Shown here: piece after piece, positions 1 through 28,366 of the stretch
Position numbering within the stretch: the stretch's first letter is position 1
Layout: each line of letters begins with the position of its first letter
From: Octopus sinensis
Taxonomy: Eukaryota
Assembly (NCBI RefSeq): GCF_006345805.1
Contig: NC_043007.1
Span: 25,234,001-25,298,000, forward strand
Length of the DNA stretch: 64,000 nt
Reading direction: 5' to 3'
The notes under the pieces: model-generated
Seen by the model: the letters and a program-made list of their open reading frames with translations, nothing else
The model's database searches: none
Told to the model about the DNA's origin: nothing
Program-made: the position numbers and the translations under genes

Positions 1-99
1 TGTCAACTCATTGAACTGTGGTTCCCTTCAATGATTTTTATGGTATTTCCATAAATTTCAATTTCTTATCATTTCCCCCATACCCCAACCGTCATCCTC

Positions 100-530
100 T
101 TGACATTTTCAACATCATCAGCATCATCATTATCATTGTCGTCATCGCCATCATCGTCATCATCGTTGCCATTGTCATCATTATCATCATCATCATCATT
201 GTCATCATCATCATCATTATCAACATCTTCGTCATCAACATGATTATTATCATCATCATCATAATTATCTATTATCATCATCATCGACATTGCCATCATT
301 ATCATCATCATCATCATTATCAACATCTTCGTCATCAACATGATTATTATCATCATCATCATAATTATCTATCATCATCATCATCATCATCATCATTGTC
401 ATCATCATCATCATTATCAACATCTTCGTCATCAACATGATTATTATCATCATCATCATAATTATCTATCATCATCATCATCATTGACATTGTCATCATT
501 ATCATCATCATCATCATCATCATTATAATT
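100..530. repeat. Degenerate (CAT)n with a 97-100 bp higher-order unit
   Basis: caacatcttcgtcatcaacatg recurs at 221, 321 and 418. Confidence 0.9.
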
Positions 531-1095
531 ATACATGAGTTACTTCCTCTCCCTGGTTTTTATACTGTGTCCATGACCAAGACTACTACTTATCAACAGT
601 ACTGTTTACCTTGCTATAAGTTGGCACCACTATTTACCAACAGCAGCAGCAGCAGCAGCAGCAATACCTTTGGCAAGGCATAATATAAGAACCACCCAAC
701 TGAGGGCAACAACCATTTAACCCTCACCTCTTCCATTGAAAGCTTCCTAATAGACATCACAACAGAATGAATGTGACTATCTCAGGTGTACCACCACCAT
801 CACCACCGCCACTACCAATATCACCACTAATATCATCATCATCATCATTGTCGTCATCATCATCATCATCATCAGATTATGGTGAGTTTAAAAATTACTC
901 GTCCGGTTAATAGACACACACACACACACACACATACATAAAAAAAAAATCCACCAACCACATCATCAGAGCCACCCAGCCATCCATACGTAATCATTAA
1001 AAAAAAACTGGATTAAGGGTGGAGTTAATCTCATTGAAATAATCCTCTTAAAACTGTTGTTCTTCTTGTTTGCGTTCTTCTCTCCCCCTCTCTCT

Positions 1096-1143
<48 letters not shown>

Positions 1144-1206
1144 GTATATATATACACATACTACATATATACATACATACATATACATATATATCTATAC
1201 ATACAT

Positions 1207-1280
<74 letters not shown>

Positions 1281-1291
1281 TATATATATAT

Positions 1292-1354
<63 letters not shown>

Positions 1355-1640
1355 TACACACACACACACACACACATATATATGTGTGTTTGTGTGTGTG
1401 CATATATGTGTTATAATGAGGTTGACCTGTTATACACTCACACTGACATGTGTAAATATATTTCTAGATAGACAGCTTAGTGTGTGTGTGTGTGCATATA
1501 TCATTTTTGCCATGTAAAAAAGCATATATCTGTCAATCATATAACATGTTACGTTTCTGTTCATGGTCTGACACTTGACTGTACATATACAAAATGCCAT
1601 GATCCTGCATGGCATTTAACTGAGAAGAGACATTTATGTT

Positions 1641-1982
1641 GTTGGCAAATCTCAGGAAGCATGGAAGTTTTGAAAGATGCAGTGCTCCGACAACTAACAA
1701 CTGATGCCGGCAGTTTGTTCCATGCTTCAGCAACTCTTAGCACGAAATGCTTCACGCTAAGAGTTGCTGAAGTATGGAACAAACTACCGGCATCAGTTGT
1801 TAGTTGTTGGAGCACTGCATCCTTCAAAACTTCCATGCTTCCTGAGATTCGCCAACACTACACCTGATTTTCTCCCTTCCATACACACCCAAGACACACC
1901 CAAGACATTTGTACATTACTGCATATGCTTTATTCGCACTTTTGACAAGTTGTGGTGCATCTGAGCACTGTATACAATAATT

Positions 1983-1985
<3 letters not shown>
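1641..1985 (+). mobile_element. CR1-like LINE 3' end with a snap-back inverted duplication; other copies near 9995-10175, 22485-22727 plus 23190-23230, 51170-51345 (-), 53915-54300 (-)
   Basis: FTLRVAE(V/A)WNKLPASVVSC.STASFK is the CR1 RT C-terminal motif; (ATT)n tail. Confidence 0.8.
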
Positions 1986-2017
<32 letters not shown>

Positions 2018-2038
2018 TTATTATTATTATTATTATTA

Positions 2039-2078
<40 letters not shown>

Positions 2079-3820
2079 GTTACAGTAAAAGCTTCAGATC
2101 ATCTGCTAGGCTAAAAAGTCATCATTTTATTGCTCTTTAGCAACCATAGAGTATTGTCCATCTTGTTGTCCACAGGATGGCCAACAGCAGACTTCCTAGA
2201 CAAATTCTTTACTCCCAACTTCTCTGTGTGTTGTGAATGTTTGGAGAAGTTGTGTGGCACTCCAAGTGTTTCAGTTTCTCCTGTGTGAGAGGTATGTTTT
2301 TGTTGTTGAATATGATGGTTAGCTGTATTTCATGTTCACTGATGATGATGCATCATCATCATCGTTTAACGTTCGTTTTCCATGCTAGCATGGGTTGGAC
2401 AGTTTTACAGGGGTCTGGGAAGCCAGGAGGCTGTGCCAGGCTCTAGTCTGATCTGGCAGTGTTTCTACAGCTGGATGCCCTTCCTAACACCAACCACTCC
2501 ATGAGTGTTGTGGGTGCTTTTTATGTGCCACCAGCACAGGGGCCAGAGGAGGCTGGCAATGGCCATGATCGGTTGGTGCTTTTTACATGCCACCAGCGCT
2601 GGCATCGGCTATGTTCAGATGGTGCTTTTTATGTGCCACTGGCTCGGGTATCACAACTACAATTTCCATTTGATTTTAATTTTGATGTTGATGTACTGGA
2701 CTCAGTAGGTCTCCTCATGCACAACAGGTTGCCCTACGATCCAAGGTAAGCATAGCAGGCCATCCTACGAACCATGAACTCACTTCATTTGTTGGGTCTT
2801 CACAGTCACAGCACACCACCACCACCACCACCACCACCACCACCACCACTACCACTACTACTACTACTACTACTACGTGACAGAAGATTTAGAAAATCCA
2901 TTTTTAACCCTTTTACATTTGTATTACTCTCCCAATCGTCACCATCATCAATTAGTGTCTGCTTTCCATGGGTTAGACATGCTACATAAATATATACACA
3001 TGTAGACTATTGACACCATATACATCATTCATCATCAATTAGTGTCTGCTTTCCATGGATTAGACGGTTTGACTGAAACTAGTAAGCTGAAGAGTTACAC
3101 CAGGTTCCAATCTAACTTGACATAGTTTATATGGCTGGATGCCAACCACTCCAAGAGTGTAATGGGTGCTTTTTTACATGCCACCGGCATGGGTGCCAAT
3201 TATGTGACACCAGCATTGGCCACAACAATGATTTCACTTGGTTTGATGAGTTTTCTCAAGCATGGCATAATGCCAAAGGTCTTGGTCACTCATCACTTCT
3301 GTGAGGCCCAATATTTGAAGGTTTCTTTTTATGTACCACCAGCACAGGTGCCTGTTATGTGACACTAGCATCAGCCATGACTACGGTTCCACTTGGCTTG
3401 ATGGGTCTTCTCAAGCACTGCATATCACCCACATTGTTTTGAATTTATGAAGCGTATTCGAGAATTCAACGATGCAATTGTTTATCTTCAAAATGACATT
3501 GTAGGGTAGGTGAAAGAGGTCAGATCTGGCCAGTTTGAACCTAAAACAAGTAGCATATTTGACCCAGATATGACAAGTTTAAATGCTAAAAAGTTAAATC
3601 TGCTACAGTGGAGCCAGGCTCCTCAGTGACTTGTTTTGTGTCCAGCATGGAGAATGAACATTTGACTATGGTGATGGTGATGGTGCTGGTGGTGGCAGCT
3701 GCAACAGTAGCAGTGGTGGTAGTGGTCATGGCATCAGAGGTGAAGTAGTAGTAGTAGTAGTGGTGGTGGTGGTGGTGGTGGTGGTGGTGGTGGTGATGGT
3801 GGTGGTGGTGGTGGTGGTGA

Positions 3821-3878
<58 letters not shown>

Positions 3879-4227
3879 TGCGCAACACTGCCTTAAGTAT
3901 GGCAGAAAAATGTGAGCGTGATGTCATCTGTATATGCTTTGCAACAATAGGGACAATGCAAAAAGTGTCAAATATATATTGTTTGAAAAGCGGGGGTGAG
4001 ATGTACTCCTGTGGCAGACCATTCACGAAACTGCAAGTTCTGGGAGTTTTGTATTTTGTATAACTGTACAGGCTTGGCAATCTTACAAGCAGTTTGCTAG
4101 TCAGCATTTCATTTTGTTATTTTGATGAGTAACCTTGGTAGGGGTGGTCAAAGAGGAATGGAAGCAAAAAACTTAGCATATGTTTTGGAATTATTGTTTA
4201 TGTTCTATGCCTTACTATGTGTTTCAG

Positions 4228-4453
4228 GTCATTCTTGGAGCATTCTTCCATGACTTTGGACATTTCCTGCAAATGGAAGGGAAGCAGAATCTAATGATTG
4301 TTGATGGTGTTGTCTTGGGGACATCAAATCATGAAAAAATTGCAGCAGAGTATCTGGAAGCCAGGAATTTCTCTCCCATCATTTGCAACATTGCCAGACA
4401 CCATGTGAATGCCAAGAGATATCTTGTTTTCAAGAATAAATCCTATTATGAGT
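4228..4453 (+). CDS. HD-domain diiron dioxygenase, PhnZ/TmpB-like (2-amino-1-hydroxyethylphosphonate dioxygenase-like), penultimate coding exon
   Basis: Acceptor tttcag|GTC, donor GAG T|gtgagt (phase 0 in, phase 1 out). Encodes VILGAFFHDFGHFL...NHEKIAAEYL...RHHVNAKRYLVFKNKSYYE, containing the HDxGH, second His and HVxAKRY motifs of the PhnZ subfamily. Confidence 0.88.
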
Positions 4454-4774
4454 GTGAGTAGCTTCTAATGTGATCTTTCTGTTTAAAATGATCTTTTATG
4501 AGTCGATGAGGTAGAATGTACATAGCCACTCAACCTGCTAGAAATACCAGCTAAATTTCTCATAACTTGCACCTTGCCATCTTAAGTAATATATCGAATG
4601 GACCAATGAAGGAGTCTTTAATGGTCATTTTGGTCTCTGAGAAATAGCTACCAAATCTCCCTCTGAATACATTCTGCCACCTTAGAAAAGAACACTTGGT
4701 TCTAAGCATACTGTGCCTAGCAGAAAGGTAGAATAATCAAGGTTGGAATGTCTCTGATCAAAGGTGTGAATATT

Positions 4775-4813
<39 letters not shown>

Positions 4814-5833
4814 TGTATGTATGTATGTATGTATGTATGTATGTATGTATGTATGTATGTATGTATGTATGTATGTATGTATGTATGTATGTATGTATGT
4901 ATGTATGTATGTATGTATGTATGTATGTATTATGTAGGCAAGTATGTGGCCATGCTGGAGCACCTCTTTAAAAAGTTTTAGTCAAAGAAATCAACCCCAG
5001 TACTTATTCCTTGCAAGTCTGGTACTTTATTCTATGGACCTCTTTTGCCAAACTGCTAAGTTACTGGGACAGAAACACACCAGAATCAGTTGTCAAGTGA
5101 TGGCAGAAGGGACAAACTCAGACACACACACACACACACCACACACACATAAACACACACACACACACACACACAACTATATATATGATGAGCTTCTTTC
5201 AGTTTCTCTCTAACCAATCCACTCACAAGGCTTTGGTTGGCCTGAGTCTATAGTAAAGATACTTGCCCAAGTTACCACTCAGTGGGGCTGAACATGGAAT
5301 CATATGGTTGAGAAGCAAGCCACATGGCCACAGTGTTTAGGTGATGAAGATACGATTTTAAAATGATGACTTTTGTTTTGCTTAACCCTTTAACATTCAA
5401 TCCAGCCAAAATATATTCTACCTATTTGCTTACCAACCATATGGTTCTGGGTTTAGTCCCACTGCGTGACATCTTGGGCAAGTGTCTTCTGCTATAGCCT
5501 CGGGCCGACCAATGCCTTGTGAGTGAATTTGGTAGACGGAAACTGAAAGAAGCCTGTCGTATATATGTATATATATATGTATGCGTGTGTATGTGTTTGT
5601 GTGTCTGTGTTTGACCCCTAGCATTGCTTGACAATTGATGCTGGTGTGTTTACGTCCCCATCACTTAGCGGTTCAGCAAAAAGAGACCGATAGAATAAGT
5701 ACTGGGCTTACAAAGAATAAGTCCCGGGGTCGATTTGCTTGACTAAAGGTGGTGCTCCGGCATGGCCGCAGTCAAATGACTGAAACAAGTAAAAGAGTAA
5801 AAGAGAGAGAGTTATGTTCAATCGAACAAGACC

Positions 5834-5993
5834 GGATTACCAAAGATTCATTCAGTCACACATTGGTTCACAGACATGCTAACCATTCTATCTCTCATTT
5901 TTGCAATTACAACTGTGTCATTTATTCCTCTGGTTTACCAAACCAAACTGTTCTCCGCTCTCTCCACCTCATGCTAAGCCATTGTGCTGTCAC
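5834..5993 (+). repeat. 160-bp direct repeat; second copy at 7799-7958
   Basis: ggattaccaaagattcattcag...gctgtcac in both places, highly similar. Confidence 0.85.
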
Positions 5994-6070
5994 ATTTAGC
6001 CTACAGTGCCATTCTAGAAATAACAATTATATCATCAGAAACTCAAAGGTACAAGACAATGCATGATTAA

Positions 6071-6280
6071 CCCTTTTGTTACCATACTTCTGTTGAGATG
6101 CTCTGTGTTTCTTTCAATTACTTTAAATATAACAAAGAATTTAGTAAAATAACTTAGTTATTATTCAGCTAGTATTAGGAACATAAATTGTGTGGAAGAT
6201 TTTTATTCAAAACTTCTGAAAACAAGGCATTTGTACTCAGAGCCAGAGCCAGTTTCAGAGCCAGGTTTGTAACAAAAGGG
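6071..6280. mobile_element. piggyBac-type MITE (about 210 bp); further copies at 7488-7708, 26942-27158, 47533-47752, 51980-52180
   Basis: ttaa|CCCTTT(T/C)GTTAC ... GTAAC(A/G)AAAGGG|ttaa termini with a shared internal sequence. Confidence 0.8.
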
Positions 6281-6699
6281 TTAATTCAAAATGATGTGAA
6301 TAAATAGGCATTACATTTGAGAGGGTAACCTGAATACTTAAGGGTTAAGGGACATATAAGTGCAGAATTGGAAATGAACGAAAATTAAACTTGAAATGTA
6401 TAAAAATAAACTTGGCTTTCCTGAGTAAATGAAAGGAATTATGTGGTCATTGACCTGTTGGAAATAGCAGTCAAATTTTCCCTAAATCATATGCTAGCAT
6501 CTTTGAAGATGAAGAGATATACTGGATAAATATACAGTAGTCTCTGTCACTCTATGTCTGATAAAAAGTTAGGATGGTCATGTTTGAATGAGGTCCAACT
6601 GGGGCCCAGTGGGATAAACTGGTATTACTGCTGTTATTACTGTTTCTGCTGCTGCTACTACTACTACTACCACTGCTGTTGCTGCTGCTGCAGCTGCTG

Positions 6700-6734
<35 letters not shown>

Positions 6735-6735
6735 G

Positions 6736-6771
<36 letters not shown>

Positions 6772-6836
6772 ATCCATTTGTATCAGCTGAATTGTAATTT
6801 CCACACCTTTTGTTCTTTTTTTTTTTAATTTCCCAG

Positions 6837-7039
6837 CTTTGACTGAGGCTAGTAAACAGACTCTGCAACTGCAAGGCGGCGTTATGTCAGAAGAAGAAGC
6901 TGGGGAATTTGAACGGCAGCCAATGTTCGACCTGATAATCCAAGCCAGGAAGTGGGATGAAGAAGGAAAAGATCCTAACAAGGTTCTTAAACCAATCAAA
7001 TATTATCGAAATATGTGTGCAGACATTCTCAAGAAATGA
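6837..7039 (+). CDS. PhnZ-like HD-domain dioxygenase, terminal coding exon
   Basis: Poly-T tract and tcccag|CT complete TCT in phase with the previous exon. Encodes LTEASKQTLQLQGGVMSEEEAGEFE...ARKWDEEGKDP...ILKK, stop TGA at 7037-7039. Has the SxxTLxxQGG and RxWD motifs. Confidence 0.88.
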
Positions 7040-7086
7040 ATTGGAGACATTTGGAATTTGGACAGTTTCTGGAATTTGTGTGTGTG

Positions 7087-7124
<38 letters not shown>

Positions 7125-8795
7125 AAACAGTGCTGCCACATACACAAACACCTCAGACTTCATCCTGAAAATTCAGCTTCCTGTTTATAGCCAGGAAACA
7201 TTTCAGCCCTGATAAGTTGTTGAACCTGTCAATTCTTAAGTAAGGTCCATATTAAAGAAGCAGTGCCCTTATTTTATCTGCTACAGTATCACTGTTGCAC
7301 ACATAAATACATACCTTAGGCTGTTATTACCCTTTAGCATTTAAACTGTCCAAATCTGGCCTTCCTCACCTACTCTACAAAGTCATTTCACATTGTCAAA
7401 TTCATATCGTCAAATTCACATTGTCAAATTCACATCGCCAAATTCACTTCGTCAGATTCTTGAAGCTGCAAGATAATGCTTGAGTAACCCTTTCGTTACT
7501 GTATTTATTTTGAGATGCCCTGTGTTTCTTTCAATTATTTTAAATATAAGAAAAAATGTAGTAAAATAACTTAGTTATCATTAAGCTAGTGTTAGGAACA
7601 TAAATTGTGACTAAAGTTTGGTGGAAGATTTTAATGCAAAACTTATGGAAACAAGACATTTGTACTACAGAGCCAGAGCCAGTTTTGGCCAGGTTGGTAA
7701 CAAAAGGGTTAATTGAAAACAATGTGTTCAAATAAGCATTACATTTGACAGAATAAGCTGAATGCTAAAGGGTTGAAAAATATACCGATTCTTTGACTGG
7801 ATTACCAAAGATTCATTCAGTTACACATTGGTTCACAGACATGCTAACCATTCTGTCTCTCATTTTTGCAATTGCAATTGTGTCATTTATTCCTCTGGTT
7901 TACCAAACCAAACTGTTCTGTGCTCTCTCCACCTCATGCTAAGCCATTGCGCTGTCACGTCCTTCTTTCATCATTTCTTATCTCTTTATTGCCCACAAGG
8001 GGCTAAACATAGAGGGGACAAACAAGGACGGACAAACGGATTAAGTCGATTATATCGACCCCAGTGTGTAACTGGTACTTAATGTATCGACCCCGAAAGG
8101 ATGAATGGCAAAGTCAACCTTGGCGGAATTTGAACTCAGAACGGAGAGGCAGACGAAATACTGCTAAGCATTTCGCCCGGCATGCTAACGATTCTGCCAG
8201 CTCTTTCATCATTTCTACTGCATCACATTCACTTTACCAAACATATTTCTTCATCTTTTTCCAGAAATGTGTGCTTTGCAGTTCCAAACAGCAACAAAAT
8301 TCGAAGAATATAGTATATTCCTAAACACTATCATAGACAAGGGAAACATTTACTGATTAAAATCAAAATAGATTTACAGTAATTGTATAAATCAATGCAA
8401 TATTTTGGAAATAAAGAAATTGCATTCTTTTTATCTTTTATCTTTTACTTATTTCAGTCATTGGACTGCAGCCATGCTGGAGCAAAACCATCAACTCTGG
8501 GGGTGGTTTTGTTGCAAGTTGACAAGAGTTGCAACAAAAGTTGAAGGGACATATAACTCTTAACTTAATCACCTGCTTGATTCGTTTCATCTTTTTCACA
8601 GCAACCATAAGCCGGATGTGTTTATTCACCTCCAACAATAGAGAGCAGTTGTCATACTTCATTCCATAATGGTTACCTCTGAAGAGCGCAAGGTTACATA
8701 ATCTGACTGTTACCTAACACTCTGTATAACCCCTGGTGCGAAACTGATTGGTAAGATCAGCTGTAATGGTTATATAATACTGTACACTTCGATTA

Positions 8796-8846
<51 letters not shown>

Positions 8847-11199
8847 GAAACAACAACAACAGATGAACATTGATAGTTAGTCCATCAGTGCCTGATGATG
8901 ATAAAGTCTGTGTTCTCAGCAATGAGAGCGTATGTGATTCTGCAGTCCAAAGCTGGAAACACACAGGTGCCTACAAATGCCACAGTGATAGTCTGTTGAC
9001 TGGATTGAAGTGGATGCTGCCCTGTGGTGTCTTTCTCTTGCAGCATTGAGATGTTATTATTATTATTATTATCATTACTGTTGTTGTTGTTGTTATTATT
9101 ATTAATATTATTATTATTATTATTATTATTATTGAGTGAGAGAGCAATGCATGCCATCAAAGTGACACTAGGGTACAGATATACAAAGCCCAATATACCC
9201 ATCATGACTACCCGTCTGATAAGGGTACACCAGACACATGCATCATAATCATATGTGTGCAACATGGTAATCTCACATATCAAGATAAACAGTGCATGCG
9301 CTTGCAGGTGGGGCCCAGTGAGAATTTCTTTCAGCTCTAGTAGCCGATCCCGCTCAAAAGGTCCCCGAATAAGCGTTGTTTAAAGAAGCTGAATGAAACA
9401 TGCATGTTTCCAGAGGTAAGTTATTCAAACCCCAAAGAATTCCTCTCAGCACATGGTTATGATGCCACCCTCCACTACTTCTGCTCATGATCAGAAATGC
9501 ACATATCGTCAGCCACCAAGAGATATGCTCAACTGGTTAAAGTCAAGCAAATCTGTGGCTTTGAGCAGAATATTTGCTGTAGCCCATCTTTTACACAAAG
9601 ACAAAACGACTACATGATGACACTTCCAATCAGTAAAGATCAGAAGCCATGAGAGCGGGCGAAATGCTTAGCGGTATTTCGTCTGCGTTACGTTGTGAGT
9701 TCAAATTCCGCCAAGGTCAACTTTGCCTTTCATCCTTTCGGGGTCGATAAATTAAGTACCAGTTACACACTGGGGTCGATGTAATCGACTTAATACCTAT
9801 GTCTGTCCTTGTTTGTCCCCTCTGTGTTTAGCCCCTTGTGGGTAATAAAGAAATAGGTATTTATTATTGTTGTTGTTATTATTATTATTATTATTATTAT
9901 TTTATGTGAAAAATAACGTCTTGAATGGCACAACAATATAGAGTGGACTATAATAACATTTATAATTTAATTATTCATAGTCTGATATAACACACCTGAG
10001 ATTCACCAACACTACACCTGATTTTCTCCCCTCCATACATGCGCAGGCATGTATCTGACTCATACACTGTTCACTTTCCAGACATTTGTTCATTACTGCA
10101 TATGTTTTTATACGCACTTTTGACAAGTTGTGGTGCACCTGAGCACTGTATACAATAATTTCATTATTATTATTATTATATTTCAGAATATAAAAATTCC
10201 TTCTTCAGACATAACTAAGAATTGATTGAGTCACTGCTATAATCGGTTTTCCAATGGTTACTGAAATTTTTTTTTCAGAAGCGTCTCTGAAGTGGTTTTA
10301 TGAAGCTCCTTCTGGAATTCCTCATGAGAAGTGCGTGAGGGTGGCCATGTCTCAGGCTCGTGTGTGTTGGCATATCCGCAGCGCTGCTTCTAAGTTATGT
10401 ATTATATGTACAGTTTTTTGGGGGTGAGGGATTTTTTTTTTTGTGAAACTTGATCATGTTACCAGAAATGAATTTACATGCATCCATGTATACTGAATAA
10501 TTATATTTTATATAATAGCGTGAGTTCATGGCTGTTTCCTGCACCAGCATCACATAGAAGCCCCAGCCCATCCAAAGTACCTTGGATCGCAGGACGGCCT
10601 GCTGTGCTTACCTTGGATTGTAGGGCGACCTGCTGTGCTTGAGGAGACCTATTGAGTCAAGTACACAACATCAAAAAATCAAATGGAAATTGTAGTTGTG
10701 ATACCTGTGCCGGTGGCACGTAAAAAGCACCATCCGAATGTGGCTGATGCCAGTGCCACCTTGACTGGCTTCTGTGCCGGTGGCACATAAAAAGCACCAA
10801 CTGATCATGGCCATTGCCAGCCTCCCCTGGCACCTGTGCCGGTGGCACATAAAAAGCACCCACTACACTCACGGAGTGGTTGGCGTTAGGAAGGGCATCC
10901 AGCTGTAGAAACACTGCCAGATCAGACTGGAGCCTGGTGCAGCCTTCGGGCTTCACAGACCCCAGTCGAACCGTCCAACCCATGCTAGCATGGAAAACAG
11001 ACGTTAAACGATGATGATGATGATGATTATGATATATGTATATCCATCTATACCTATACATGTGTATATCCTTCATCTTTTACTTGTTTCAGTCATTAGA
11101 CTGTGAACACGCCTGGGCACCGCCTTGAAGAATTTTTTAGTTGAATGAATCGCACTTCAGTACTTATTATTTGTTTTAAGCCTGGTACTAATTCTATCA

Positions 11200-11214
11200 G
11201 TCTCTCTCTCTCTC

Positions 11215-11263
<49 letters not shown>

Positions 11264-11384
11264 ATATATATATATGTGTATGTATGTATGTATATATATA
11301 TATGTGTATGTATGTATATATATATATATATGTATGTATATATATATATATGTGTATGTATGTATGTATATATATATATGTGTG

Positions 11385-11427
<43 letters not shown>

Positions 11428-11525
11428 GTATGTATATATATATATGTATGTATATATATATATGTATATATATGTATGTATATGTATATGTATGTATGTA
11501 TGCATATATATATATATATATGTAC
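11200..11525. repeat. Compound (TA)/(TATG) microsatellite; similar tracts at 1080-1400, 4773-4930, 16100-16520, 43050-43210
   Basis: Seen directly in the sequence. Confidence 0.95.
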
Positions 11526-11699
11526 CTATAAAATGTAAACATATAGGAAAAGAGACATATAAGTACACACATATCCGCACACACACAGATTCGTTGTACC
11601 CTATTTACATAATCATTATGATAACAAAAAACCTATAAGCTGCTCAGTGTTTCACACCTTTAATCTACTTGATTTGTATTTACCTTCTCGTTAATTATT

Positions 11700-12230
11700 A
11701 TTGTTCCAGTAGTGGTGGTCATCATGGTGTAAGGGGTGATGGTGAAAATGGTGACGGTGGAGGTGGAACTAATTGTAGAGGTGGTATTGGTGCTAGTAGA
11801 ATGGTGGTAATTATGATGAAGGTATTGATATTAATATTAGTGATGGTGGTAGTTGTGGTGGCTGTGGTAGTAGTGGTGATAGTGATGGTGGTTGTGGTGG
11901 CAGTGGTAGTAGTGATTGTGTGGTGGTGGTGGTTGTGGTGGCATTGGTAGTAGTGGTGATGGTGATGGTAGTGATGGTGGTTGTTGTGGTGGCAGTGGTA
12001 GTAGTAGTGGTAGTGGTAGTAGTGGTGGTGGTGGCAGTGGTAGTAGTGGTGATGGTGGTGGCAGTGGTAGTAGTGGTGATGGTGGCAGTGGTAGTAGTGG
12101 TGATGGTGGTGGCTGTGGTAGTAGTGGTGGTGGTTGTGGTGGCAGTTGTAATAGTGGTGATGGTGATGGTAGTGATGGTGATGGTTGTGGTGGCAGTGGT
12201 AGTAGTGGTGATGTTGGTGGTACAAGATAG
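11700..12230. repeat. (GGT/AGT/GAT) low-complexity minisatellite
   Basis: ggtggcagtggtagtagtggtgat units; open in several frames on both strands. Confidence 0.9.
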
Positions 12231-13542
12231 CAGCGTAAGTGAATAGAAAAATAGAATCTTCAGCCATGTAACAGTAGCAGTAGTAGTAGTAGCAGCAGCA
12301 GCAGAGGTTGTGATGGTGATGGTAACAACTCTTTTTGATTTTTTACCCTAGGCCAACAGTTTTAAGGGGACAGGGAAGCTCAACTCTGGTGCTCAGCTGG
12401 TAATTATTTTATCAACCCCTAAATGATGAAAGTTAAAGTTGATCTCATCGACATTTGAACTCGGAACATAAAGCACTGGAACAAAGGCCACGAAGTATTT
12501 TTAATCATTTTGTCAATCCATTGCCCTTTGGTAATAATTTTGATGATGATGATAATGATGGTGATTCTTTCTACAATAGGTACAATGTCTGAAAGTTTGG
12601 AAGAGTGGGCTAGTCAATAATAATAATAATAATAATATTAATAAAATGCCCTGATGCAGTTCCAGGCAGTGGCTCTTGTAGTTTCTAATCTTAACTGATT
12701 GGAAGTGTTATCATGTACATTGTTTTGTCTTGGTATAAAAGATGGGCTACAGCAAATATTCTGCTCAATACCACAGATTTGCTTGTCAGTTGTTTGACCT
12801 TAACCACTTGACCATGTCCTTTAGTGGCTGACGATATGAGCATCTCTGATCATGAGAATATGTAGTAGGGGAGCATCATAGCCATGTGTTGAGAGGGATT
12901 TCTTGGGGTTTGAATAATTCACCTCTGGAAACATGGGTGTTTCGTTCAACATCCTTAAACAATCCTTATTCAGGGACCTTTTGAGCAGGATGGGTTACTC
13001 GACCAGAAGAGCATTCTAACTGGGCCCCACCTGCAAGGTCATGTGCTGTTTATCTTGATATGAGATCACCATGTCACGCACATATGGTTGTGGTGCATGT
13101 GCCTGGTATACCCTTATCAGATGGGTAGTCATGATGGGTATACTGGTCTTCGTATATTTTACCCCAGTGTCACTTTGATGGCATGCGCTGCTCTCTCACT
13201 CAATAATAATAATAATAATAATAATCCTTTCTGCTATAGGCACAAGGCCTGAAATTTTGGGGGAGGGGTCTAGTCGATTAAATCGATCCCAATGTGTAAC
13301 TGGTACTTATTGCATCGACCCAATAAGATTAAAGGCAAAGTCAACCTAGGTGGAATCTGAACTCAGAACATAAGGACAGATGAAATGCCACTAAGCATTT
13401 TGCCCAGTATGCTAATGGTTCTGCCAGCCTGCTACCTAGAATAATAATAATCTTTTCTACTGTAAGCACAAAGCCTGAAATTTGGTGGGGGAAGGGATAT
13501 ATCGATTACATTGACCCCAGTGCATAACTGGTACTTATTTCA

Positions 13543-13930
13543 GTGGAGGCGCAATGGCCCAGTGGTTAGGGCAGCGGACTCGCGGTCATAGGAACGCGGT
13601 TTCGATTCCCAGACCGGGCGTTGTGAGTGTTTATTGAGCGAAAACACCTAAAGCTCCACGAGGCTCCGGCAGGGGATGGTGGTGATCCCTGCTGTACTCT
13701 TTCACCACAACTTTCTGTCAGTCTTACTTCCTGTTTCTGTTGTACCTGTATTTCAAAGGGCCGGCCTTGTCACTCTCTGTGTCACGCTGAATATCCCCGA
13801 GAACAATGTTAAGGGTACACGTGTCTGTGGAGTGCTCAGCCACTTACACGTTAATTTCACGAGCAGGCTCTTCTGTTGATTCGGATCAACCGGAACCCTC
13901 GTCGTCGTAACCGACGGATGTGCTTCCCCA
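13543..13930 (+). mobile_element. Young tRNA-derived SINE; other copies at 33078-33464 (-), 37954-38341 (-), 40816-41201 (-), diverged 50627-50930 (+)
   Basis: A-box tggcccagtgg and B-box gtttcgattcc; TSDs cttatttca (9 bp), ttctgctagttact (14 bp), acacacaaacacatc (15 bp). Confidence 0.88.
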
Positions 13931-14629
13931 CTTATTTCATTGACCCTGATAGGATAAAAGACAAAGTTGATCTTGGCAGAATTTGAACTCAGAACATGAA
14001 GCTGGACAAAGTACTGCTAAGCATTTTGCCCAGCGTGTAAAAATAGGAAAGCTTAGAGAGTGTTTGTGGACAGTTGAGTGAATCTGATGTTGCTCAAAGA
14101 GGTACAGAACCAGCATGGGGGTAACTCCGCTGCTGATATTGAGGGTTGCGTTCTATGCCTTGACCCGAGCATAGAATGGGGCTTGCCACTTTGAGCTGGA
14201 AAAGAATGGAATGCCTGGTATGGTCTTGTTGTGGCTACCCACTCCTTAAAAAATGGGGAATAGGCCCAGGTATATAATCGTCGTTTAACGTCCGTTCTCC
14301 ATGCTAGCATGGGTTGGACGGTTCGACCGGGGTTCTGGGAAGCCAGAAGGCTGCACCAGGCTCCAGTCTAATCTGGCAATGTTTCTACAGCTGGATGCCC
14401 TTCCTAACGCCAACCACTCCGTGAGTGTAGTGGGTGCTTTTTACGTGCCACCTGCACAGGTGCCAGGCGGGGCTGGCAATAATAATAATAATAATAATTC
14501 TTTCTACTATTTTAGAATGTCTAATGGAATTTAAAATTATTTTTATGCATTTGTGTACATTTAAACTAATTAAATATTATTTTACAGAATTATAGAATTA
14601 AAATTTCTTTGATTAAAACCCTTTCTAAC

Positions 14630-15657
14630 ATGGAAGTATCCAAAGAACACTTGAGGCACATAATGCTTTATGAGTACAAAAAAGGAAACTCTGCAGCTGA
14701 AGCGACTTGAAACATACACTCAGTTTATGGGAAAGAATGCTTGAATGAAAGAACTTGCAGAAGATGGTTTGCAAAATTCAGAAGTGGAGATTTCAGCCTT
14801 GAAGATGAAGATCGAACAGGACGTCCAGTTGAATTTGATGATAAGCTCCCTGAGGCATTACTTGAAGAAAATCCTGCATTATCAGTTGAAGAATTGGTAA
14901 TAAAGCTTAGTTGAAACCATACAACTGTTCATCATCATCTTCAACAACTTGGAAATGTTCCTAAACTTGGAAAATGGGTGCCTCATGAATTGTCCGAAAG
15001 CAACCGCAAATCCCAAGTTGACATCTGCTCTTCTCTCCATTCTCGTGAACTCATTTCACCCTTTTTGGATAGACTTATGACTGATGATGAAAAATGGCTC
15101 TTCTATTGAAATGTTAAATGTTGTAAACAGTGGCTTGATAAAAGGGAGAAAGCTCAACCACAACCAAGAGGGGAACTTCATGGGAAAAAGGTTCTTCTCT
15201 CTATCTGGTGGGATTGCAAAGGAGTAATTCACTCTGAATTGTTACCACCTAATGCAACAATCAATGTTCAAGTCTACTGTCAGCAATAAGAGCATTTGAA
15301 CCAAGTTTTGAAGAAAAAAAGACCCACTTTAGTGAATCGAAAAGGCGTGATGTTTCATCAGGACAATGCGTGACTCCACACTGCAAAGATCACATCACAG
15401 AAGATTGAAGAGCTTGGTTGCAAAAAAATTCTCATCCACCTTATTCTCCCAACCTTGCTCCTTCAGACTACCATTTGTTTCATAGTTTACAGAATCATTT
15501 GGGGGACATAACTTTCGCAAGCCAGGAGGAGGTCAAAACTGACATTTCAGAGTTCTTCGCTTTGAAACCAAAAGAGTTTTACATTAATGGGATTAAAAAG
15601 CTTGTAAATAGATGGAAAGATGTCATAGATAATCAGGGAAAGTACATTGATGATTAA
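14630..15657 (+). pseudogene. Full-length decayed mariner (DD34D) transposase
   Basis: MEVSKEHLRHIMLYEYKKG...WVPHEL...TDDEKW...HQDNA...YSPNLAPSDY...GKYIDD-TAA; five in-frame stops and a frameshift near 15420; no intact TIR seen. Confidence 0.92.
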
Positions 15658-15704
15658 ATTTCATTTAAATACAACATTTGATCACTTGATTTCTTTATTC
15701 AAAA

Positions 15705-16081
15705 TTCGGTGAATGATGCCACTGCTACAAACAATTGGCCTCTTAGCTCTTTCAGTTAAACCCCCTGGACCACTATATCCAGGGCATTGTTGAAAGGGTG
15801 ACGTTGCAATACCAAGTACCAAGGACTTGTTAATGTCTGCTGTTGGCAAAATTATGGCCAACATAAATAAAGATCACCTGGTCAATGTATTTAGCTGTTT
15901 CAGAAACTGTATTGAGTCAGTAATAGAAGCTGACAGTAGTTTTTATTGAATGATGCTTTGCTATGTGTATGTAAGAATATGTGTAACAAATTCCATAAAA
16001 AATATATTGGTTTTTCTAATAAATATTTTTGTTTTCCTCAAATCGAAATTTCGCTCTCAAATAGCTGACACACCTTATGTA
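15705..16081 (+). mobile_element. Tc1-like transposon 3' remnant abutting the mariner
   Basis: Frameshifted WP...LNPLDHYI.GIVER...IMANINKDHLV...IESVIEAD, followed by a TIR-like end ...ctgacacaccttatgta. Confidence 0.65.
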
Positions 16082-16267
16082 TTTGAAATGTGGACATATC
16101 ATATACACACACACATCATATATATATAATATATATATATATATATTATATATATATATATACACATGTATGTGTGTGTATATGTATATATACACATATA
16201 TATATGTGTGTGCCTCTCTCTCTCTCTTTATATATATATATATATATACAGGCATATATATATGTAC

Positions 16268-16346
<79 letters not shown>

Positions 16347-16441
16347 ACATGTACATATATATATCATGTGTGCATTTGTATATATACATACATACATACA
16401 TATATATATATATACACACACACACACATACATATATATAT

Positions 16442-16473
<32 letters not shown>

Positions 16474-17744
16474 GCATGTATATATGTATATATCATATAT
16501 ATATGTGTGTGTGTGTGTGTGCGCATATGTGTATAGTGTCTATGCGTGTATCTGCACTCACCTACATACACATCTTCTCTATTTCTTTATTTCTTCTCAT
16601 CACCAACTGACTTTCACCTGCTATCAACCCCACCACCACCACCACCACCACCACCACCACCATCAAAACAGAGACAGTAGTCACTACTCCCATCAAGTCT
16701 CTCTCTCTCTCCCTCCCCCACTCTCTCTTTCAATCTATCTCTTATTCAACCATCTTTATCCTCTTAAATGTTACATTGGCTTTAAACTCTTCAAATTAGC
16801 CTTCTAATGTCATAATCCTTTTTTAGTCTTCTCTACACACTTTTCCTTCTCATTTTCTCTCTCTCTATCTCTCCTCTTCACCAATCTCACTCTCTTCTCT
16901 CTCTGTTCCTTCTTCACTCTCTCAGACTCACTCTGTCTTTTCTCTCCTAGCTCTCCCCCTCTCTCTCTCTCACACACACATACACCTTCTCCTCAAGGGC
17001 AGTGGTTTACCAAGTTAATCCTACTCATTATATGAAGGTCGTTACCTGGGAGAGGAAAAACAAAAATACAAACAAAATACAGAAAAATTTATACCAAAAT
17101 AAATTATTAATATAAATAAAGCAACAAAAATGCAAAAAAATAAAATAAAATAAAATAAAATAAGTAAATTCGTTAAATTACTTGTAATTATTTCAAGCAT
17201 AGACACAATGATGGTAATTTGCAAGAGTGAAATTTGTAGTTTATACCATCAACCCCAGTACGTGACTGGTACTTATTTTATTGAACTAAGGTAGCGAGCT
17301 GGCAGAAATGTTAGCACGCTGGGCGAAATGCTTAGCGGTATTATGTCTGCCATTATATTCTGAGTTCATATTCTGCCGAGGTCAACTTTGCCTTTCATCC
17401 TTTCAGGGTCAATAAATTAAGTACCATTTGCATACTGTGGTCGATCTAATCAACTGGCCCCTTCCCCCAAAAATTTCAGGCCTTGTGCCTAGAGTAGAAA
17501 AGATTATTTTATTGAACTTGAGGAGAGGGGGAAGAAAGGCAAAGTTGACCTTGGTGGGATCTGAACACAGAGCATAAATGACGGGACCAAATACTGCAAG
17601 GCATTTTATGCAACACCCTAACAATTTTGCTAACCCACTGGTTTGTCCACATTACTCTGTAAGGAGCATAGGGCTAGTTTCTTGGTTTTCCTTGCATATA
17701 TATTCATTCCTGGACGGGATTCTGGTCTGTCTTAAGATTACTCA

Positions 17745-23023: not shown

Positions 23024-23367
23024 TACGACAGGCTTCTTTCAGTTTCCGTCTACCAAATCCACTCACGAGGCATTGGTCGGCCCGGGGCTATAGCAGAAGA
23101 CACTTGCCCAAGATGCCACGCAGTGGGACTGAACCCGGAACCATGTGGTTGGTTAGCAAGCTACTTACCACACAGCCACTCCTGCGCCTATATACAATAG
23201 GCACTGTATACAATAATTTCATTATTATACAATAAACTCTTTACCACACCAACAATGATGACGTGAATGACCCCTACCAGTTCATGCTTACAATGGTATC
23301 AAATAACATGCACAAGATCCCCTTAGAGAGGAACAGTAGAAAATTTAAGTATTTCACATGTACTTAC

Positions 23368-23510
23368 CTTCCATGGTATAGGGATTTGCTTTCTCTTCAA
23401 TAGGGCTTCAAGCTGAGCCACAGAATTTTGATTTAGACCCGTTGCAGGAATTCCCTTTTCTTCAGCGGTTTTGATGATAGCCAAACTACCTTCCACATCA
23501 CCTTGTGAAA
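23368..23510 (-). CDS. LRPPRC: LRPPRC exon
   Basis: tgtatag|(V)SQGDVEGSLAIIKTAEEKGIPATGLNQNSVAQLEALLKRKQIPIPWK|gtaagt; aligns to human YVSEKDVTSA...LLKYAGEPVPF as recalled. Confidence 0.85.
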
Positions 23511-24955
23511 CTATACAAAAAGATAATTATATATATATAATCAATGAAATTCCAATTTAGTCTGATTTTCACATTTTATTAATTTTTTACTTGTTTCAGT
23601 CATTTGACTGTGGCCATGCTGGAGCACCGCCTTTAGTCGAGCAAATCGTCCCCAGGACTTATTCTTTGTAAGCCTACAACTTATTCTATCAGTCTCTTTT
23701 GCCGAACCACTAAGTTACGGGGACGTAAACATACCATCATCGGTTGTCAACAAACACAGACACACAAACGTACACACACACACATACATATATACATATA
23801 CACGACGTGCTTCTTTCAGTTTTCGTTTACCAAATCCACTCACAAGGCTTTGGTCAGCCTGAGGCTATAGTGGAAGACACTTGCCCAAGGTGCCACGCTG
23901 TATGTTGTGTTCTTGAGCAAGACACTTTATTTCAGATTGCATCAGTTCACTCAGCTGTAGAAACGAGTTGCAACGTCACAGGTGCCAAACTGTATCAACC
24001 TTTGCCTTTCCCTCGGACAACATCAGTGGCGTGGAGAGGAGAGGCTGGTATGCATGGGCGACTGCTGGTCTTCCATAAACAACCTTACCCAGACTTGTGC
24101 CTCAGAAGTTAACTTTCTAGGCACAATCCGATGGTCATTCATGACCAAAGAGGGTCTTTACCCTTTTTATCTACTTCATTGAACTAACATGACTAAAACA
24201 CTACTCACAGTCCAGCAACAAACTAAGATTGAACCAGAGTCTCAATGTTCATATATCTTACAACATATATCATCATCATCACCATTATTATTATTGCGAG
24301 AACAGTGCATGCCATCAAAGTGACACTGGGCTAAAATATACAAAGACCAGTATACCCATCATGACTACCCGTCTGATAAGGGTATACTAGGCACATGCAT
24401 CACAACCATATGTGCGCGACATGGTGATCTCATATCAAGATAAACAGCGCATCACCTTGGAGGTGGGGCCCAGTTAGGATTTTCTTCTGGTCGAGTAGCC
24501 CATCCCGCTCAAACGGTCCCTGAATAAGGGTTGTTTAAGGATGTTAAACGAAACACCCATGTTTCCCGAGGTGAAATATTCAAACCCCAAAGAATTCCTC
24601 TCAACACATGGCTATGATGCTCTCCCACTACTTCTGCTCGTGATCAGAGATGCACATATCGTCAGCCACTAAGGGACATGCTCAACTGGTAAAGGTCAAA
24701 CAACTGACAAGCAAATCTGTGGTATTGAGCAGAATATTTGCTGTAGCCCATCTTTTATACCAAGACAAAACAATGTACATGATAACACTTCCAATCAGTT
24801 AAGATCAGAAGTCATGAGAGCCACTGTCTGGTACTGCATGAGGGCATTTATTATTATTATTATTATCATTATTATTATTATTAGTGTTGTTAGTTTGTTA
24901 GTGTTTTTTTTTTCACTATTTCTTATTCCTTTTCTTATTGTCAATGCAAACTTAC

Positions 24956-25040
24956 CAGGAATGAACAAATGTTGACCATAGATGAACCTCAAAGTTGGGA
25001 GTTGTGTAAATATGGTTGGCAACACCTTAAAGACATCTTC
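24956..25040 (-). CDS. LRPPRC: LRPPRC exon
   Basis: tctacag|EDVFKVLPTIFTQLPTLRFIYGQHLFIP+g|gtaagt; phase 0 to 1. Confidence 0.78.
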
Positions 25041-28297: not shown

Positions 28298-28366
28298 TCG
28301 CTTTTCTTGGACTGCTTTCCGGCACAGACCTAAGATACTGGAATTTTGGAGTAAATCAGAATTTCT
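28298..28366 (-). CDS. LRPPRC: LRPPRC exon
   Basis: gtttcag|RNSDLLQNSSILGLCRKAVQEKR|gtaagt; phase 0 to 0. Confidence 0.8.

What the first reader, a model, noticed from the sequence alone, without database searches (positions are those of the whole stretch)
4228..7039. Intron-containing animal gene for a PhnZ-type C-P bond-cleaving dioxygenase with a complete active site
Seen: two exons splice in phase into an HD-domain protein with HDFGH, a His followed 24 residues later by HVNAK, then S-x-x-T-x-x-x-Q 22 residues after that His, and R-x-x-D 29 residues after the Thr. Established (numbering from memory): bacterial PhnZ uses H58/D59/H80/H104/D161 as diiron ligands and H62/K108/S126/T129/Q133/R158 around the substrate, with these same spacings. 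PhnZ converts 2-amino-1-hydroxyethylphosphonate to glycine and phosphate after PhnY* hydroxylation, and molluscs are rich in ceramide-aminoethylphosphonate. Inference: this animal may have its own oxidative phosphonate-recycling route (PhnY/Z- or TmpA/B-like) that frees phosphate from its phosphonolipids. Spliceosomal introns and host repeats in the intron argue against bacterial contamination. Homologs are probably annotated in other invertebrates, but I know of no functional work on an animal enzyme.
Basis: partly seen in the sequence, partly recalled or inferred. Interest (0 to 1): 0.82.

Follow-up and report, generated by a model that had tools for sequence, protein, structure and literature searches.

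The report
Octopus PhnZ-like phosphonate-cleaving oxygenase gene
The window holds the last two of three exons of a real octopus gene for a PhnZ-type iron enzyme that probably breaks the carbon-phosphorus bond of a hydroxylated aminoethylphosphonate; public databases already name it that way by homology, many invertebrates share it, and nobody has tested it.

Summary
Exons at 4228-4453 and 6837-7039 (+) join GT..AG in phase 1. They encode residues 52-193 of a 193-aa HD-domain protein. The window is 100% identical to Octopus sinensis chromosome CM016869.1, and the product equals RefSeq XP_029642310.1, already named [quoted passage not shown]. Exon 1 lies about 4.3 kb before the window and carries the first metal His and the YxxE loop. 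With it, all 14 PhnZ metal and substrate residues are present.

An AlphaFold model (pLDDT 93) matches only PhnZ and TmpB strongly (TM 0.83-0.94). MIOX and HD phosphohydrolases are far off. The gene is under purifying selection (dN/dS 0.06-0.11).

It is neither contamination nor a recent transfer. Homologues occur in jellyfish, a flatworm, a shrimp, a crinoid, a hemichordate and tunicates. Both intron positions and phases are shared with a hemichordate and a tunicate.

Not shown: enzyme activity, transcription and the hydroxylase partner. No PhnY*-like gene lies near six animal loci, and no animal appeared in the listed results of two profile searches.

Verdict: a new, untested animal member of a known enzyme family, already named by automatic annotation. 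Interest is moderate.

The parts
1..4227 (+). 3' part of intron 1. The whole intron is 8,506 bp; exon 1 lies 4,280-4,432 bases upstream of window base 1 and is not in the window.
   Evidence: The window is 100% identical to O. sinensis CM016869.1 (L012 14433-31471 = window 1-17039). Exon 1 is at L012 10001-10153 with donor AAAGAG|GTGAGT and acceptor tgtttcag|GTCATT at L012 18660 = window 4228. No exon-1 match exists in the window.
4228..4453 (+). Exon 2 (226 nt, residues 52-126 plus the first base of codon 127). It encodes H59-D60, H63, H86, H110 and K114, which correspond to PhnZ H58, D59, H62, H80, H104 and K108.
   Evidence: The same exon boundaries are found in O. vulgaris, Argonauta, Ptychodera and Styela.
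4454..6836 (+). Intron 2 (2,383 bp, GT..AG, phase 1), filled with host repeats.
   Evidence: Donor GAGT|GTGAGT and acceptor ttcccag|CT. It contains (TATG)43, (AC)27 and (CTA)n arrays. Dispersed repeat copies lie at 4945-5323 and 5426-5808, and a second element at 6032-6346; each is repeated elsewhere in the window.
6837..7039 (+). Exon 3 coding part (residues 127-193 and the stop TGA). It encodes S132, T135, Q139, R164 and D167, which correspond to PhnZ S126, T129, Q133, R158 and D161.
7040..7256 (+). Presumed 3' UTR, up to the first polyadenylation-like hexamer (ATTAAA at 7251). This is inferred only.
   Evidence: A pattern search after the stop codon. No transcript data were available.

Best explanation
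Window 4228-7039 holds exons 2 and 3 of the three-exon Octopus sinensis gene LOC115216972 (protein XP_029642310.1, 193 aa). The product is a small, probably cytosolic HD-domain enzyme of the PhnZ/TmpB clade. Six residues (H35, H59, D60, H86, H110, D167) would hold a diiron centre. By analogy with PhnZ, this centre works in the mixed-valent Fe(II)/Fe(III) state. A 1-hydroxyalkylphosphonate would bind one iron through its hydroxyl and phosphonate oxygens, held by K114, S132, T135, Q139, R164 and H63. The YxxE loop (Y25/E28) would swing so that the Glu grips the substrate's amino group and the Tyr leaves the second iron free for O2. The resulting superoxo species would abstract the C1 hydrogen, and the C-P bond would be cleaved to phosphate plus a carboxylic acid. 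The most likely substrate is (R)-1-hydroxy-2-aminoethylphosphonate, possibly also its N-methyl form, giving glycine (or sarcosine) and phosphate. This would let the animal recover phosphorus from the aminoethylphosphonate head groups of its own or its prey's CAEP lipids. The gene is an old animal gene inherited vertically at least since the bilaterian ancestor, not a bacterial contaminant or a recent transfer. Shown here: gene structure, residue conservation, fold, selection, distribution and shared introns. Inferred: metal, chemistry, substrate and physiological role. Unknown: which enzyme makes the 1-hydroxy substrate.
For: Identity: the spliced product is identical to residues 52-193 of XP_029642310.1, and the window is 100% identical to the O. 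sinensis chromosome.

Family: the best NCBIfam model is TIGR03276, phosphonate degradation HD-domain oxygenase (E = 4.6e-53 for the full protein). The only PDB sequence matches are TmpB (3.6e-33) and PhnZ (8e-32). All 14 residues listed for PhnZ (Y24, E27, H34, H58, D59, H62, H80, H104, K108, S126, T129, Q133, R158, D161) are identical in octopus, Argonauta, jellyfish, shrimp, tunicates and a flatworm. The H..HD..H..H..D motif and the YxxE loop are the published hallmarks of these oxygenases (PMC8177086).

Fold: the AF2 model has pLDDT 93.2 and pTM 0.89. The ten Foldseek hits with E <= 1e-10 are all PhnZ or TmpB chains, with TM 0.83-0.94. The next hits have E >= 0.1: PgpH, and MIOX at TM 0.55 and 11% identity.

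Functional gene: dN/dS is 0.106 against O. vulgaris and 0.056 against Argonauta, and the frame is intact in all three full-length cephalopod models (O. sinensis, O. vulgaris, Argonauta); the O. bimaculoides model is cut short at intron 2.

Animal origin: the gene lies on chromosome-scale scaffolds of 77-100 Mb. The same LRPPRC-like neighbour is kept in Argonauta. Intron 1 (phase 0) and intron 2 (phase 1) sit at the same alignment columns in O. sinensis, Argonauta, Ptychodera and Styela. A bilaterian-specific loop insertion is present. Named homologues occur in Cnidaria, Platyhelminthes, Crustacea, Echinodermata, Hemichordata and Tunicata.

Substrate context: O. vulgaris muscle holds 29 CAEP and 6 N-methyl-CAEP species (PMC12335516). 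The closest non-animal relative (50% identity) sits next to a PhyH-family gene that is 55% identical to the original PhnY*, and next to a DUF5690 gene, a family that recurs beside the Mucilaginibacter relative.
Against: No assay, no metal analysis and no transcript evidence were available. The full protein scores 179.4 bits on TIGR03276, below NCBI's cut-off of 214.6, so it is a divergent member. It is as similar to TmpB as to PhnZ. No PhnY*- or TmpA-type hydroxylase was found in the window or within 6-10 kb of six animal homologues. Neither PhnY* profile search listed an animal protein, although only the best 120 of 2,897 and of 809 hits are shown, so absence is not proven. The NJ tree that groups the animal sequences has weak bootstrap support. 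Jellyfish copies are intronless.
Confidence: 0.7

Rival explanations
1. Same enzyme class but TmpB-like specificity: it cleaves (R)-1-hydroxy-2-(trimethylammonio)ethylphosphonate, or the mono- or dimethyl forms, to glycine betaine (or its less methylated forms) and phosphate, working with a BBOX/TauD-type hydroxylase such as TmpA.
For: TmpB is the top PDB sequence hit by a small margin (118.1 against 113.7 bits), and its structural similarity is equal (TM 0.84-0.90). In the NJ tree TmpB falls in the 33-member clade that also holds the animal sequences. Octopus has N-methyl-CAEP.
Against: The TmpB equivalog model scores 155 bits against a cut-off of 300, lower than the generic PhnZ model. Position 129 is Thr as in PhnZ, whereas TmpB has Ser. 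The nearest bacterial relative is paired with a PhyH-type PhnY*, not a TauD-type TmpA. Tree support is weak.
Confidence: 0.12
2. A diiron HD oxygenase of this clade with another substrate. Examples are hydroxymethylphosphonate (as for GmPhnZ1), 1-hydroxy-3-aminopropylphosphonate (as for PhoF), or preformed environmental or dietary 1-hydroxy-AEP with no dedicated hydroxylase partner at all ('orphan' PhnZ).
For: No partner was found near any animal locus. Close Bacteroidota relatives (Mucilaginibacter, Emticicia) also lack an adjacent PhyH gene and sit with SusC/D uptake, DUF5690, HAD, FAD-oxidase and phosphodiesterase genes. The family is known to vary in substrate (PMC10574752). The Ptychodera homologue has changed pocket residues, E27S and T129H.
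Against: The octopus protein keeps the Glu of the YxxE loop that binds the substrate amino group, and all the phosphonate-binding residues. The GmPhnZ1 model scores only 115 of 300 bits. Unlinked genes are normal in animals, so the lack of a neighbour says little.
Confidence: 0.13
3. An ordinary HD-domain phosphohydrolase (HDDC-like), not an oxygenase.
For: Pfam sees only the generic HD domain. Several sources name relatives 'phosphohydrolase'.
Against: The protein has the six-ligand H..HD..H..H..D set plus the YxxE loop, which are hallmarks of the oxygenases. No phosphohydrolase structure matches better than E = 0.1 and TM 0.41, whereas PhnZ/TmpB reach TM 0.83-0.94. PhnZ itself was long misnamed 'predicted HD phosphohydrolase'.
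Confidence: 0.03
4. Bacterial contamination of the assembly, or a recent bacterium-to-cephalopod gene transfer.
For: Non-animal relatives reach 50-51% identity, as high as other animals do. Jellyfish copies have no introns.
Against: The gene has two spliceosomal introns filled with octopus repeats. It lies on 77-100 Mb chromosomes in two Octopus species, with collinear flanks. Synteny with Argonauta is kept. Intron positions and phases are identical in a hemichordate and a tunicate. Homologues occur in seven animal phyla.
Confidence: 0.02

Closest known systems
PhnZ of uncultured marine bacterium HF130_AEPn_1 (PDB 4MLM, 4MLN, 4N6W, 4N71): (R)-2-amino-1-hydroxyethylphosphonate dioxygenase, glycine-forming
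   Same: It has the same size, about 190 aa. It has the same six metal ligands, YxxE loop, catalytic His and five phosphonate-binding residues, with the same spacings from H80 onward. The fold matches at TM 0.83-0.94 and rmsd 1.9-2.7 A.
   Different: Identity is only 32-35%. The octopus protein has a 5-residue insertion (MIVDGVVLGT) between H62 and H80 that it shares with other bilaterians. The octopus gene is split by two introns and has no adjacent PhnY* gene. Its TIGR03276 score is below the curated cut-off.
TmpB of Leisingera caerulea (PDB 6NPA): (R)-1-hydroxy-2-trimethylaminoethylphosphonate oxygenase
   Same: Sequence and fold similarity are equal to those for PhnZ (E = 3.6e-33; TM 0.84-0.90). 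It has the same ligand set and YxxE loop.
   Different: TmpB has Ser where PhnZ and the octopus protein have Thr129. The TmpB-specific model gives 155 of the 300 bits required. TmpB's partner, TmpA, belongs to a different family from the PhyH-type partner of the octopus protein's nearest bacterial relative.
PhoF of the fungus Fonsecaea multimorphosa: fused PhnY-PhnZ enzyme, the characterised eukaryotic case (PMC10574752)
   Same: It is a eukaryotic PhnZ-type domain. Many PhnZ-PhyH fusions of 430-510 aa turned up among relatives of the octopus protein.
   Different: The octopus protein is a stand-alone 193-aa PhnZ domain with no hydroxylase domain. I did not have the PhoF sequence, so no direct comparison was made.
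myo-Inositol oxygenase (MIOX), the only characterised animal HD-domain diiron oxygenase (PDB 2HUO, 2IBN)
   Same: It has an HD fold, the H..HD..H..H..D diiron motif and mixed-valent oxygenase chemistry (PMC8177086).
   Different: It is distant: 11% identity, TM 0.54-0.55, E = 0.15-0.25. It has no YxxE loop and cleaves a C-C bond, not a C-P bond.
GmPhnZ1 of Gimesia maris: hydroxymethylphosphonate dioxygenase (NCBIfam NF052439)
   Same: It belongs to the same clade of HD oxygenases.
   Different: It is the weakest of the three specific models: 115 of 300 bits.

Membership tests
[quoted passage not shown] | Six-ligand diiron motif H...HD...H...H...D | tested here: met
   H35, H59-D60, H86, H110 and D167 align with PhnZ H34, H58-D59, H80, H104 and D161. 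Five of them are encoded in the window. H35 is in exon 1, 4.3 kb upstream on the same chromosome.
[quoted passage not shown] | Mobile YxxE loop, which distinguishes PhnZ/TmpB from MIOX (PMC8177086) | tested here: met
   E-Y25-F-G-E28 aligns with PhnZ Y24/E27 and TmpB Y30/E33. It is encoded by exon 1, outside the window.
[quoted passage not shown] | Phosphonate- and substrate-binding residues H62, K108, S126, T129, Q133, R158 | tested here: met
   All are identical in the window-encoded part: H63, K114, S132, T135, Q139, R164.
[quoted passage not shown] | Fold closer to PhnZ/TmpB than to any other HD protein | tested here: met
   The AF2 model has pLDDT 93.2. The ten best PDB matches are all PhnZ or TmpB (TM 0.83-0.94, E <= 1e-10). 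The next match has E = 0.1.
[quoted passage not shown] | Fe(II)/Fe(III) cofactor and O2-dependent C-P cleavage of a 1-hydroxyphosphonate | not testable with these tools
   This needs recombinant protein, EPR or Moessbauer spectroscopy, and 31P-NMR or phosphate assays.
[quoted passage not shown] | A Fe/2-oxoglutarate hydroxylase partner (PhnY* of the PhyH family, or TmpA of the TauD/BBOX family) that makes the 1-hydroxy substrate | tested here: inconclusive
   No PhyH-like sequence occurs in the window or in the flanks of the O. vulgaris, Argonauta, Ptychodera, Styela, jellyfish and L008 loci. No animal appeared among the 120 listed hits of either PhnY* profile search. The octopus genome as a whole could not be searched, and TmpA-type genes were not searched for.
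NCBIfam TIGR03276 (Phn-HD, hypothetical equivalog) | Whole-protein score at or above the curated cut-off of 214.6 bits | tested here: not met
   O. vulgaris scores 179.4 bits and Argonauta 177.9. Jellyfish score 189. Bacterial relatives score 217-229 and pass. This is still the best-scoring model, so the animal proteins are divergent relatives, not equivalogs by NCBI's rule.
NCBIfam NF049941 (TmpB equivalog) | Score at or above 300 bits | tested here: not met
   155.3 bits.
NCBIfam NF052439 (hydroxymethylphosphonate dioxygenase PhnZ1 equivalog) | Score at or above 300 bits | tested here: not met
   114.9 bits.

The most novel reading that the evidence does not exclude
Animals from jellyfish to tunicates, but with patchy retention, carry a vertically inherited C-P bond-cleaving oxygenase. 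This would give metazoans an endogenous way to break down aminoethylphosphonate from their own or their prey's phosphonolipids. That step is so far credited only to microbes and one fungus. The enzyme may work without a dedicated PhnY* partner, either on preformed 1-hydroxy-AEP or with a hydroxylase of a family not yet linked to phosphonates.
Probability: 0.35. Interest if true: 0.7.

Novelty: new member of a known kind. Interest (0 to 1): 0.42.

Why it matters
Aminoethylphosphonate lipids are abundant in molluscs, cnidarians and other marine invertebrates, and octopus muscle alone holds dozens of CAEP species. How animals turn them over is not known. Reviews treat C-P bond cleavage as a microbial trait, with one fungal exception, and call phosphonates in eukaryotes 'cryptic' (PMC10574752). 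A conserved, selected, intron-bearing PhnZ-type gene across seven animal phyla makes the question directly testable with one small soluble protein and known substrates. If the protein is active, phosphonate recycling would join animal phosphorus metabolism and marine phosphorus budgets. The missing hydroxylase would then become a defined search target. The claim is limited: the identification itself is not new, because NCBI's pipeline already names this gene after PhnZ.

Tried and rejected
- Exon 1 in the window: tblastn with the O. vulgaris protein found only exons 2 and 3. Exon 1 was later located upstream of the window in the O. sinensis record.
- Partner gene nearby: I ran tblastn with one PhnY* sequence and then with eight. 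I also ran an HMM of eight PhnY*-type domains with filters off against six-frame ORFs of the window and six animal loci. Nothing scored above noise. One 32-aa tblastn hit in the jellyfish locus (E = 0.023) was not reproduced by the HMM.
- Partner gene in databases: two profile searches were run, one mixed bacterial and fusion-protein profile and one of four fusion-protein PhyH domains. They returned bacteria, marine protists and Mucoromycota fungi in the 120 rows shown, and no animal. This does not show absence.
- Tree: NJ with 50 bootstraps groups octopus with jellyfish and other animals, but support is low (at most 11 of 50). I therefore relied on intron positions, not the tree.
- Papers: the PhnZ structure paper and the TmpA/B paper are not held, so pocket differences between PhnZ and TmpB beyond position 129 could not be checked. 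One broad literature search was uninformative.
- Rejected readings: contamination, cephalopod-specific transfer, pseudogene, and HD phosphohydrolase. Reasons are given under the rival explanations.
Full report
**What is in the window.** Reading 3000-9000 and translating it shows two coding segments on the + strand.
- Exon 2 is 4228-4453. It is preceded by tgtttcag and followed by GTGAGT.
- Exon 3 is 6837-7039. It is preceded by ttcccag and ends in TGA.
- The join is phase 1: codon T|CT gives Ser.
- The joined product is 142 aa, from VILGAFFHDFGH to CADILKK.

Pfam sees only a generic HD domain. NCBIfam's best model is TIGR03276, 'phosphonate degradation HD-domain oxygenase' (E = 2.5e-37). The only solved structures with sequence similarity are PhnZ and TmpB (E = 1e-21 and 5e-19).

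**Which gene it is.** A protein search found a 193-aa Octopus vulgaris protein (98% identity) and a 194-aa Argonauta hians protein (80%).
- The cluster look-up shows that the same cluster holds O. sinensis XP_029642310.1, named by RefSeq '2-amino-1-hydroxyethylphosphonate dioxygenase (glycine-forming)-like'. It also holds a 128-aa O. bimaculoides model with the PhnZ name.
- Residues 52-193 of the O. sinensis protein are identical to the window product.
- The window is 100% identical over 17,039 bases to O. sinensis chromosome CM016869.1.

The window therefore starts inside intron 1.
- Exon 1 (residues 1-51) lies 4,280-4,432 bases upstream of base 1, with donor AAAGAG|GTGAGT.
- Intron 1 is 8,506 bp long.
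- A tblastn of the window confirms that exon 1 is not in it.

**Active site and fold.** A MAFFT alignment of references and animal homologues shows that all 14 positions are identical in both Octopus species, Argonauta, two jellyfish, a shrimp, two tunicates and a flatworm.
- Loop residues: Y24 and E27.
- Metal ligands: H34, H58, D59, H80, H104 and D161.
- Catalytic His: H62.
- Phosphonate-binding residues: K108, S126, T129, Q133 and R158.

The window encodes 11 of the 14. Y25, E28 and H35 come from exon 1. The H..HD..H..H..D motif and the YxxE loop are the published hallmarks of these oxygenases; the loop sets PhnZ and TmpB apart from MIOX (PMC8177086).

An AlphaFold2 model built on a 12-sequence alignment has mean pLDDT 93.2 and pTM 0.89. 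Foldseek against the PDB gives ten hits with E <= 1e-10. All are PhnZ or TmpB chains, with TM 0.83-0.94. The next hits are at E >= 0.1: PgpH, then MIOX at TM 0.55 and 11% identity. The protein therefore groups with PhnZ/TmpB, not with HD phosphohydrolases.

It is nonetheless a divergent member. The full protein scores 179 bits on TIGR03276 against a curated cut-off of 214.6. It scores 155 and 115 bits on the TmpB and GmPhnZ1 equivalog models, whose cut-offs are 300.

**A working animal gene, not contamination or recent transfer.**
- The gene sits on chromosome-scale records of 77.5 Mb (O. sinensis) and 100 Mb (O. vulgaris). The flanks are collinear at about 93% identity.
- Intron 2 carries microsatellites. 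It also holds two inverted copies of a ~380-bp dispersed repeat that has at least ten more copies in the window.
- Argonauta has the same three-exon structure and the same downstream neighbour, a PPR (LRPPRC-like) gene on the opposite strand. That gene's conserved exons lie at window 23350-29891.
- Nei-Gojobori dN/dS over exons 2-3 is 0.106 against O. vulgaris and 0.056 against Argonauta. Synonymous sites are saturated in the second comparison, so that ratio is rough, but it is clearly far below 1.

**Distribution.** An exhaustive HMMER search of 1.84 billion cluster representatives found 2,851 relatives. Name look-ups of the best hits show these animals:
- Halocaridina rubra (shrimp)
- Ciona savignyi and Styela clava (tunicates)
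- Macrostomum lignano (flatworm)
- Anneissia japonica (crinoid)
- Ptychodera flava (hemichordate)
- Sanderia and an Aurelia-type jellyfish

Several of these already carry the RefSeq PhnZ-like name. An NJ tree puts them in one 12-member clade with the cephalopods, but bootstrap support is weak.

Gene structure gives stronger evidence. Intron 1 (phase 0, between ..SKE and VILGAFFHD) and intron 2 (phase 1, in the codon after ..YYE) sit at the same alignment columns, with the same phases, in O. sinensis, Argonauta, Ptychodera and Styela. A 3-5 residue loop insertion (M-I/V-x-D/N-G-x-x-x-G-T) is shared by the mollusc, crustacean, flatworm, echinoderm and hemichordate proteins. It is absent from bacteria and jellyfish. 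The gene was therefore present, with these introns, in the bilaterian ancestor.

The jellyfish copy is intronless, so the deeper history remains open. It could be ancient eukaryotic retention or an early transfer.

**Relatives outside animals and the partner question.** The closest non-animal protein (50% identity) is bacterial. It lies beside a PhyH-family gene and a DUF5690 gene, a family that recurs beside the Mucilaginibacter relative. That PhyH protein is 55% identical to the original PhnY* of HF130_AEPn_1. Many relatives are PhnZ-PhyH fusions of 430-510 aa. Some are named as bacterial and some come from marine protist collections (MMETSP, Tara). They are like the characterised fungal fusion PhoF (PMC10574752).

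In animals no partner turned up.
- No PhyH-like sequence occurs in the window or within 6-10 kb of six animal loci.
- Two profile searches listed no animal among their best 120 hits.
- Those lists are truncated, and the octopus genome could not be searched as a whole, so this result is inconclusive.
- Close Bacteroidota relatives also lack an adjacent PhnY*. Their neighbours are SusC/D uptake, DUF5690, HAD, FAD-oxidase and phosphodiesterase genes. A PhnZ without a linked hydroxylase therefore has precedent.

**Likely function.** By homology, the protein should bind two irons and cleave the C-P bond of a 1-hydroxy-2-aminoalkylphosphonate with O2. The conserved Glu of the YxxE loop, Thr129 (Ser in TmpB) and the PhyH-type partner of the nearest bacterial relative favour (R)-1-hydroxy-2-aminoethylphosphonate, giving glycine and phosphate. 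N-methylated substrates remain possible. The precursor head groups are present in the animal: O. vulgaris arm muscle holds 29 CAEP and 6 N-methyl-CAEP species (PMC12335516). The acidic N-terminus without an obvious presequence, and the C-terminus ..ILKK, suggest a cytosolic enzyme. This is my inference from the sequence and was not tested.

**Novelty.** In the held library, no paper mentions PhnZ in an animal genome or any of the octopus gene identifiers. Eukaryotic PhnY/Z is discussed only for a fungus and for phytoplankton transcripts. The identification is nevertheless already in RefSeq by automatic naming. This is a new, uncharacterised animal member of a known enzyme family, not a new kind of system.

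**Scores.**
- PhnZ/TmpB-type C-P-cleaving oxygenase encoded by a vertically inherited animal gene: confidence 0.7.
- Interest: 0.42.
- Most novel reading not excluded (endogenous metazoan phosphonate catabolism, possibly without a classical partner): probability 0.35, interest if true 0.7.

Noticed in passing
window 23350-23527, 24951-25043, 28283-28375, 29759-29891 (- strand): Conserved coding exons of a PPR-repeat (LRPPRC-like) gene lie downstream on the opposite strand. The same neighbour, with a 1,322-aa product, follows the PhnZ-like gene in Argonauta hians, so local synteny is kept across octopods.
   Followed up: partly
window 4454-4461 (start of intron 2); protein P0375: The O. bimaculoides RefSeq/UniProt model of this gene (XP_052827485.1, 128 aa) ends in ...YYECE*. 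That is the read-through of exon 2 into intron 2, so the model lacks exon 3 and with it S126, T129, Q133, R158 and D161.
   Followed up: partly
window 4945-5323 and 5426-5808, with further copies at about 18864, 20032, 22726, 37325, 43943, 46820, 54297, 58573, 62244 and 63657: A ~380-bp dispersed repeat is present as two inverted copies inside intron 2 and at least ten more times in the window (68-94% identity). A second element at 6032-6346 recurs at 7449-7774, 26938, 47531 and 51976. Neither was classified.
   Followed up: no
window 3760-3878, 4776-4947, 6655-6770: Long microsatellites flank and fill the gene: (GTG)20 next to (TAG)19 in intron 1, (TATG)43 in intron 2, and a (CTA)n array just before exon 3.
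   Followed up: no
L009 (Ptychodera flava), protein P0036: The hemichordate homologue keeps the metal ligands but has Ser for the loop Glu (E27), His for T129, and HDIDH instead of HDxGH. This hints at a changed substrate in that lineage.
   Followed up: no
L011 10001-10579 (jellyfish, ENA contig of 5.4 Mb): The scyphozoan homologue is a single uninterrupted exon, unlike the bilaterian genes with 3-5 exons. The cause could be intron loss, retroposition or a separate origin; this is unresolved.
   Followed up: partly
L013 (Mucilaginibacter conchicola) and L014 (Emticicia agri): These Bacteroidota relatives (41-51% identical to the octopus protein) have no adjacent PhnY*-type gene. Their neighbours are SusC/SusD, DUF5690, HAD hydrolase, FAD oxidase and a phosphodiesterase. 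This looks like a different, uncharacterised phosphonate-use locus.
   Followed up: no
proteins P0100 and P0129: Some relatives are PhnZ domains fused to a HAD-family hydrolase instead of a PhyH hydroxylase. I have not seen this architecture described.
   Followed up: no
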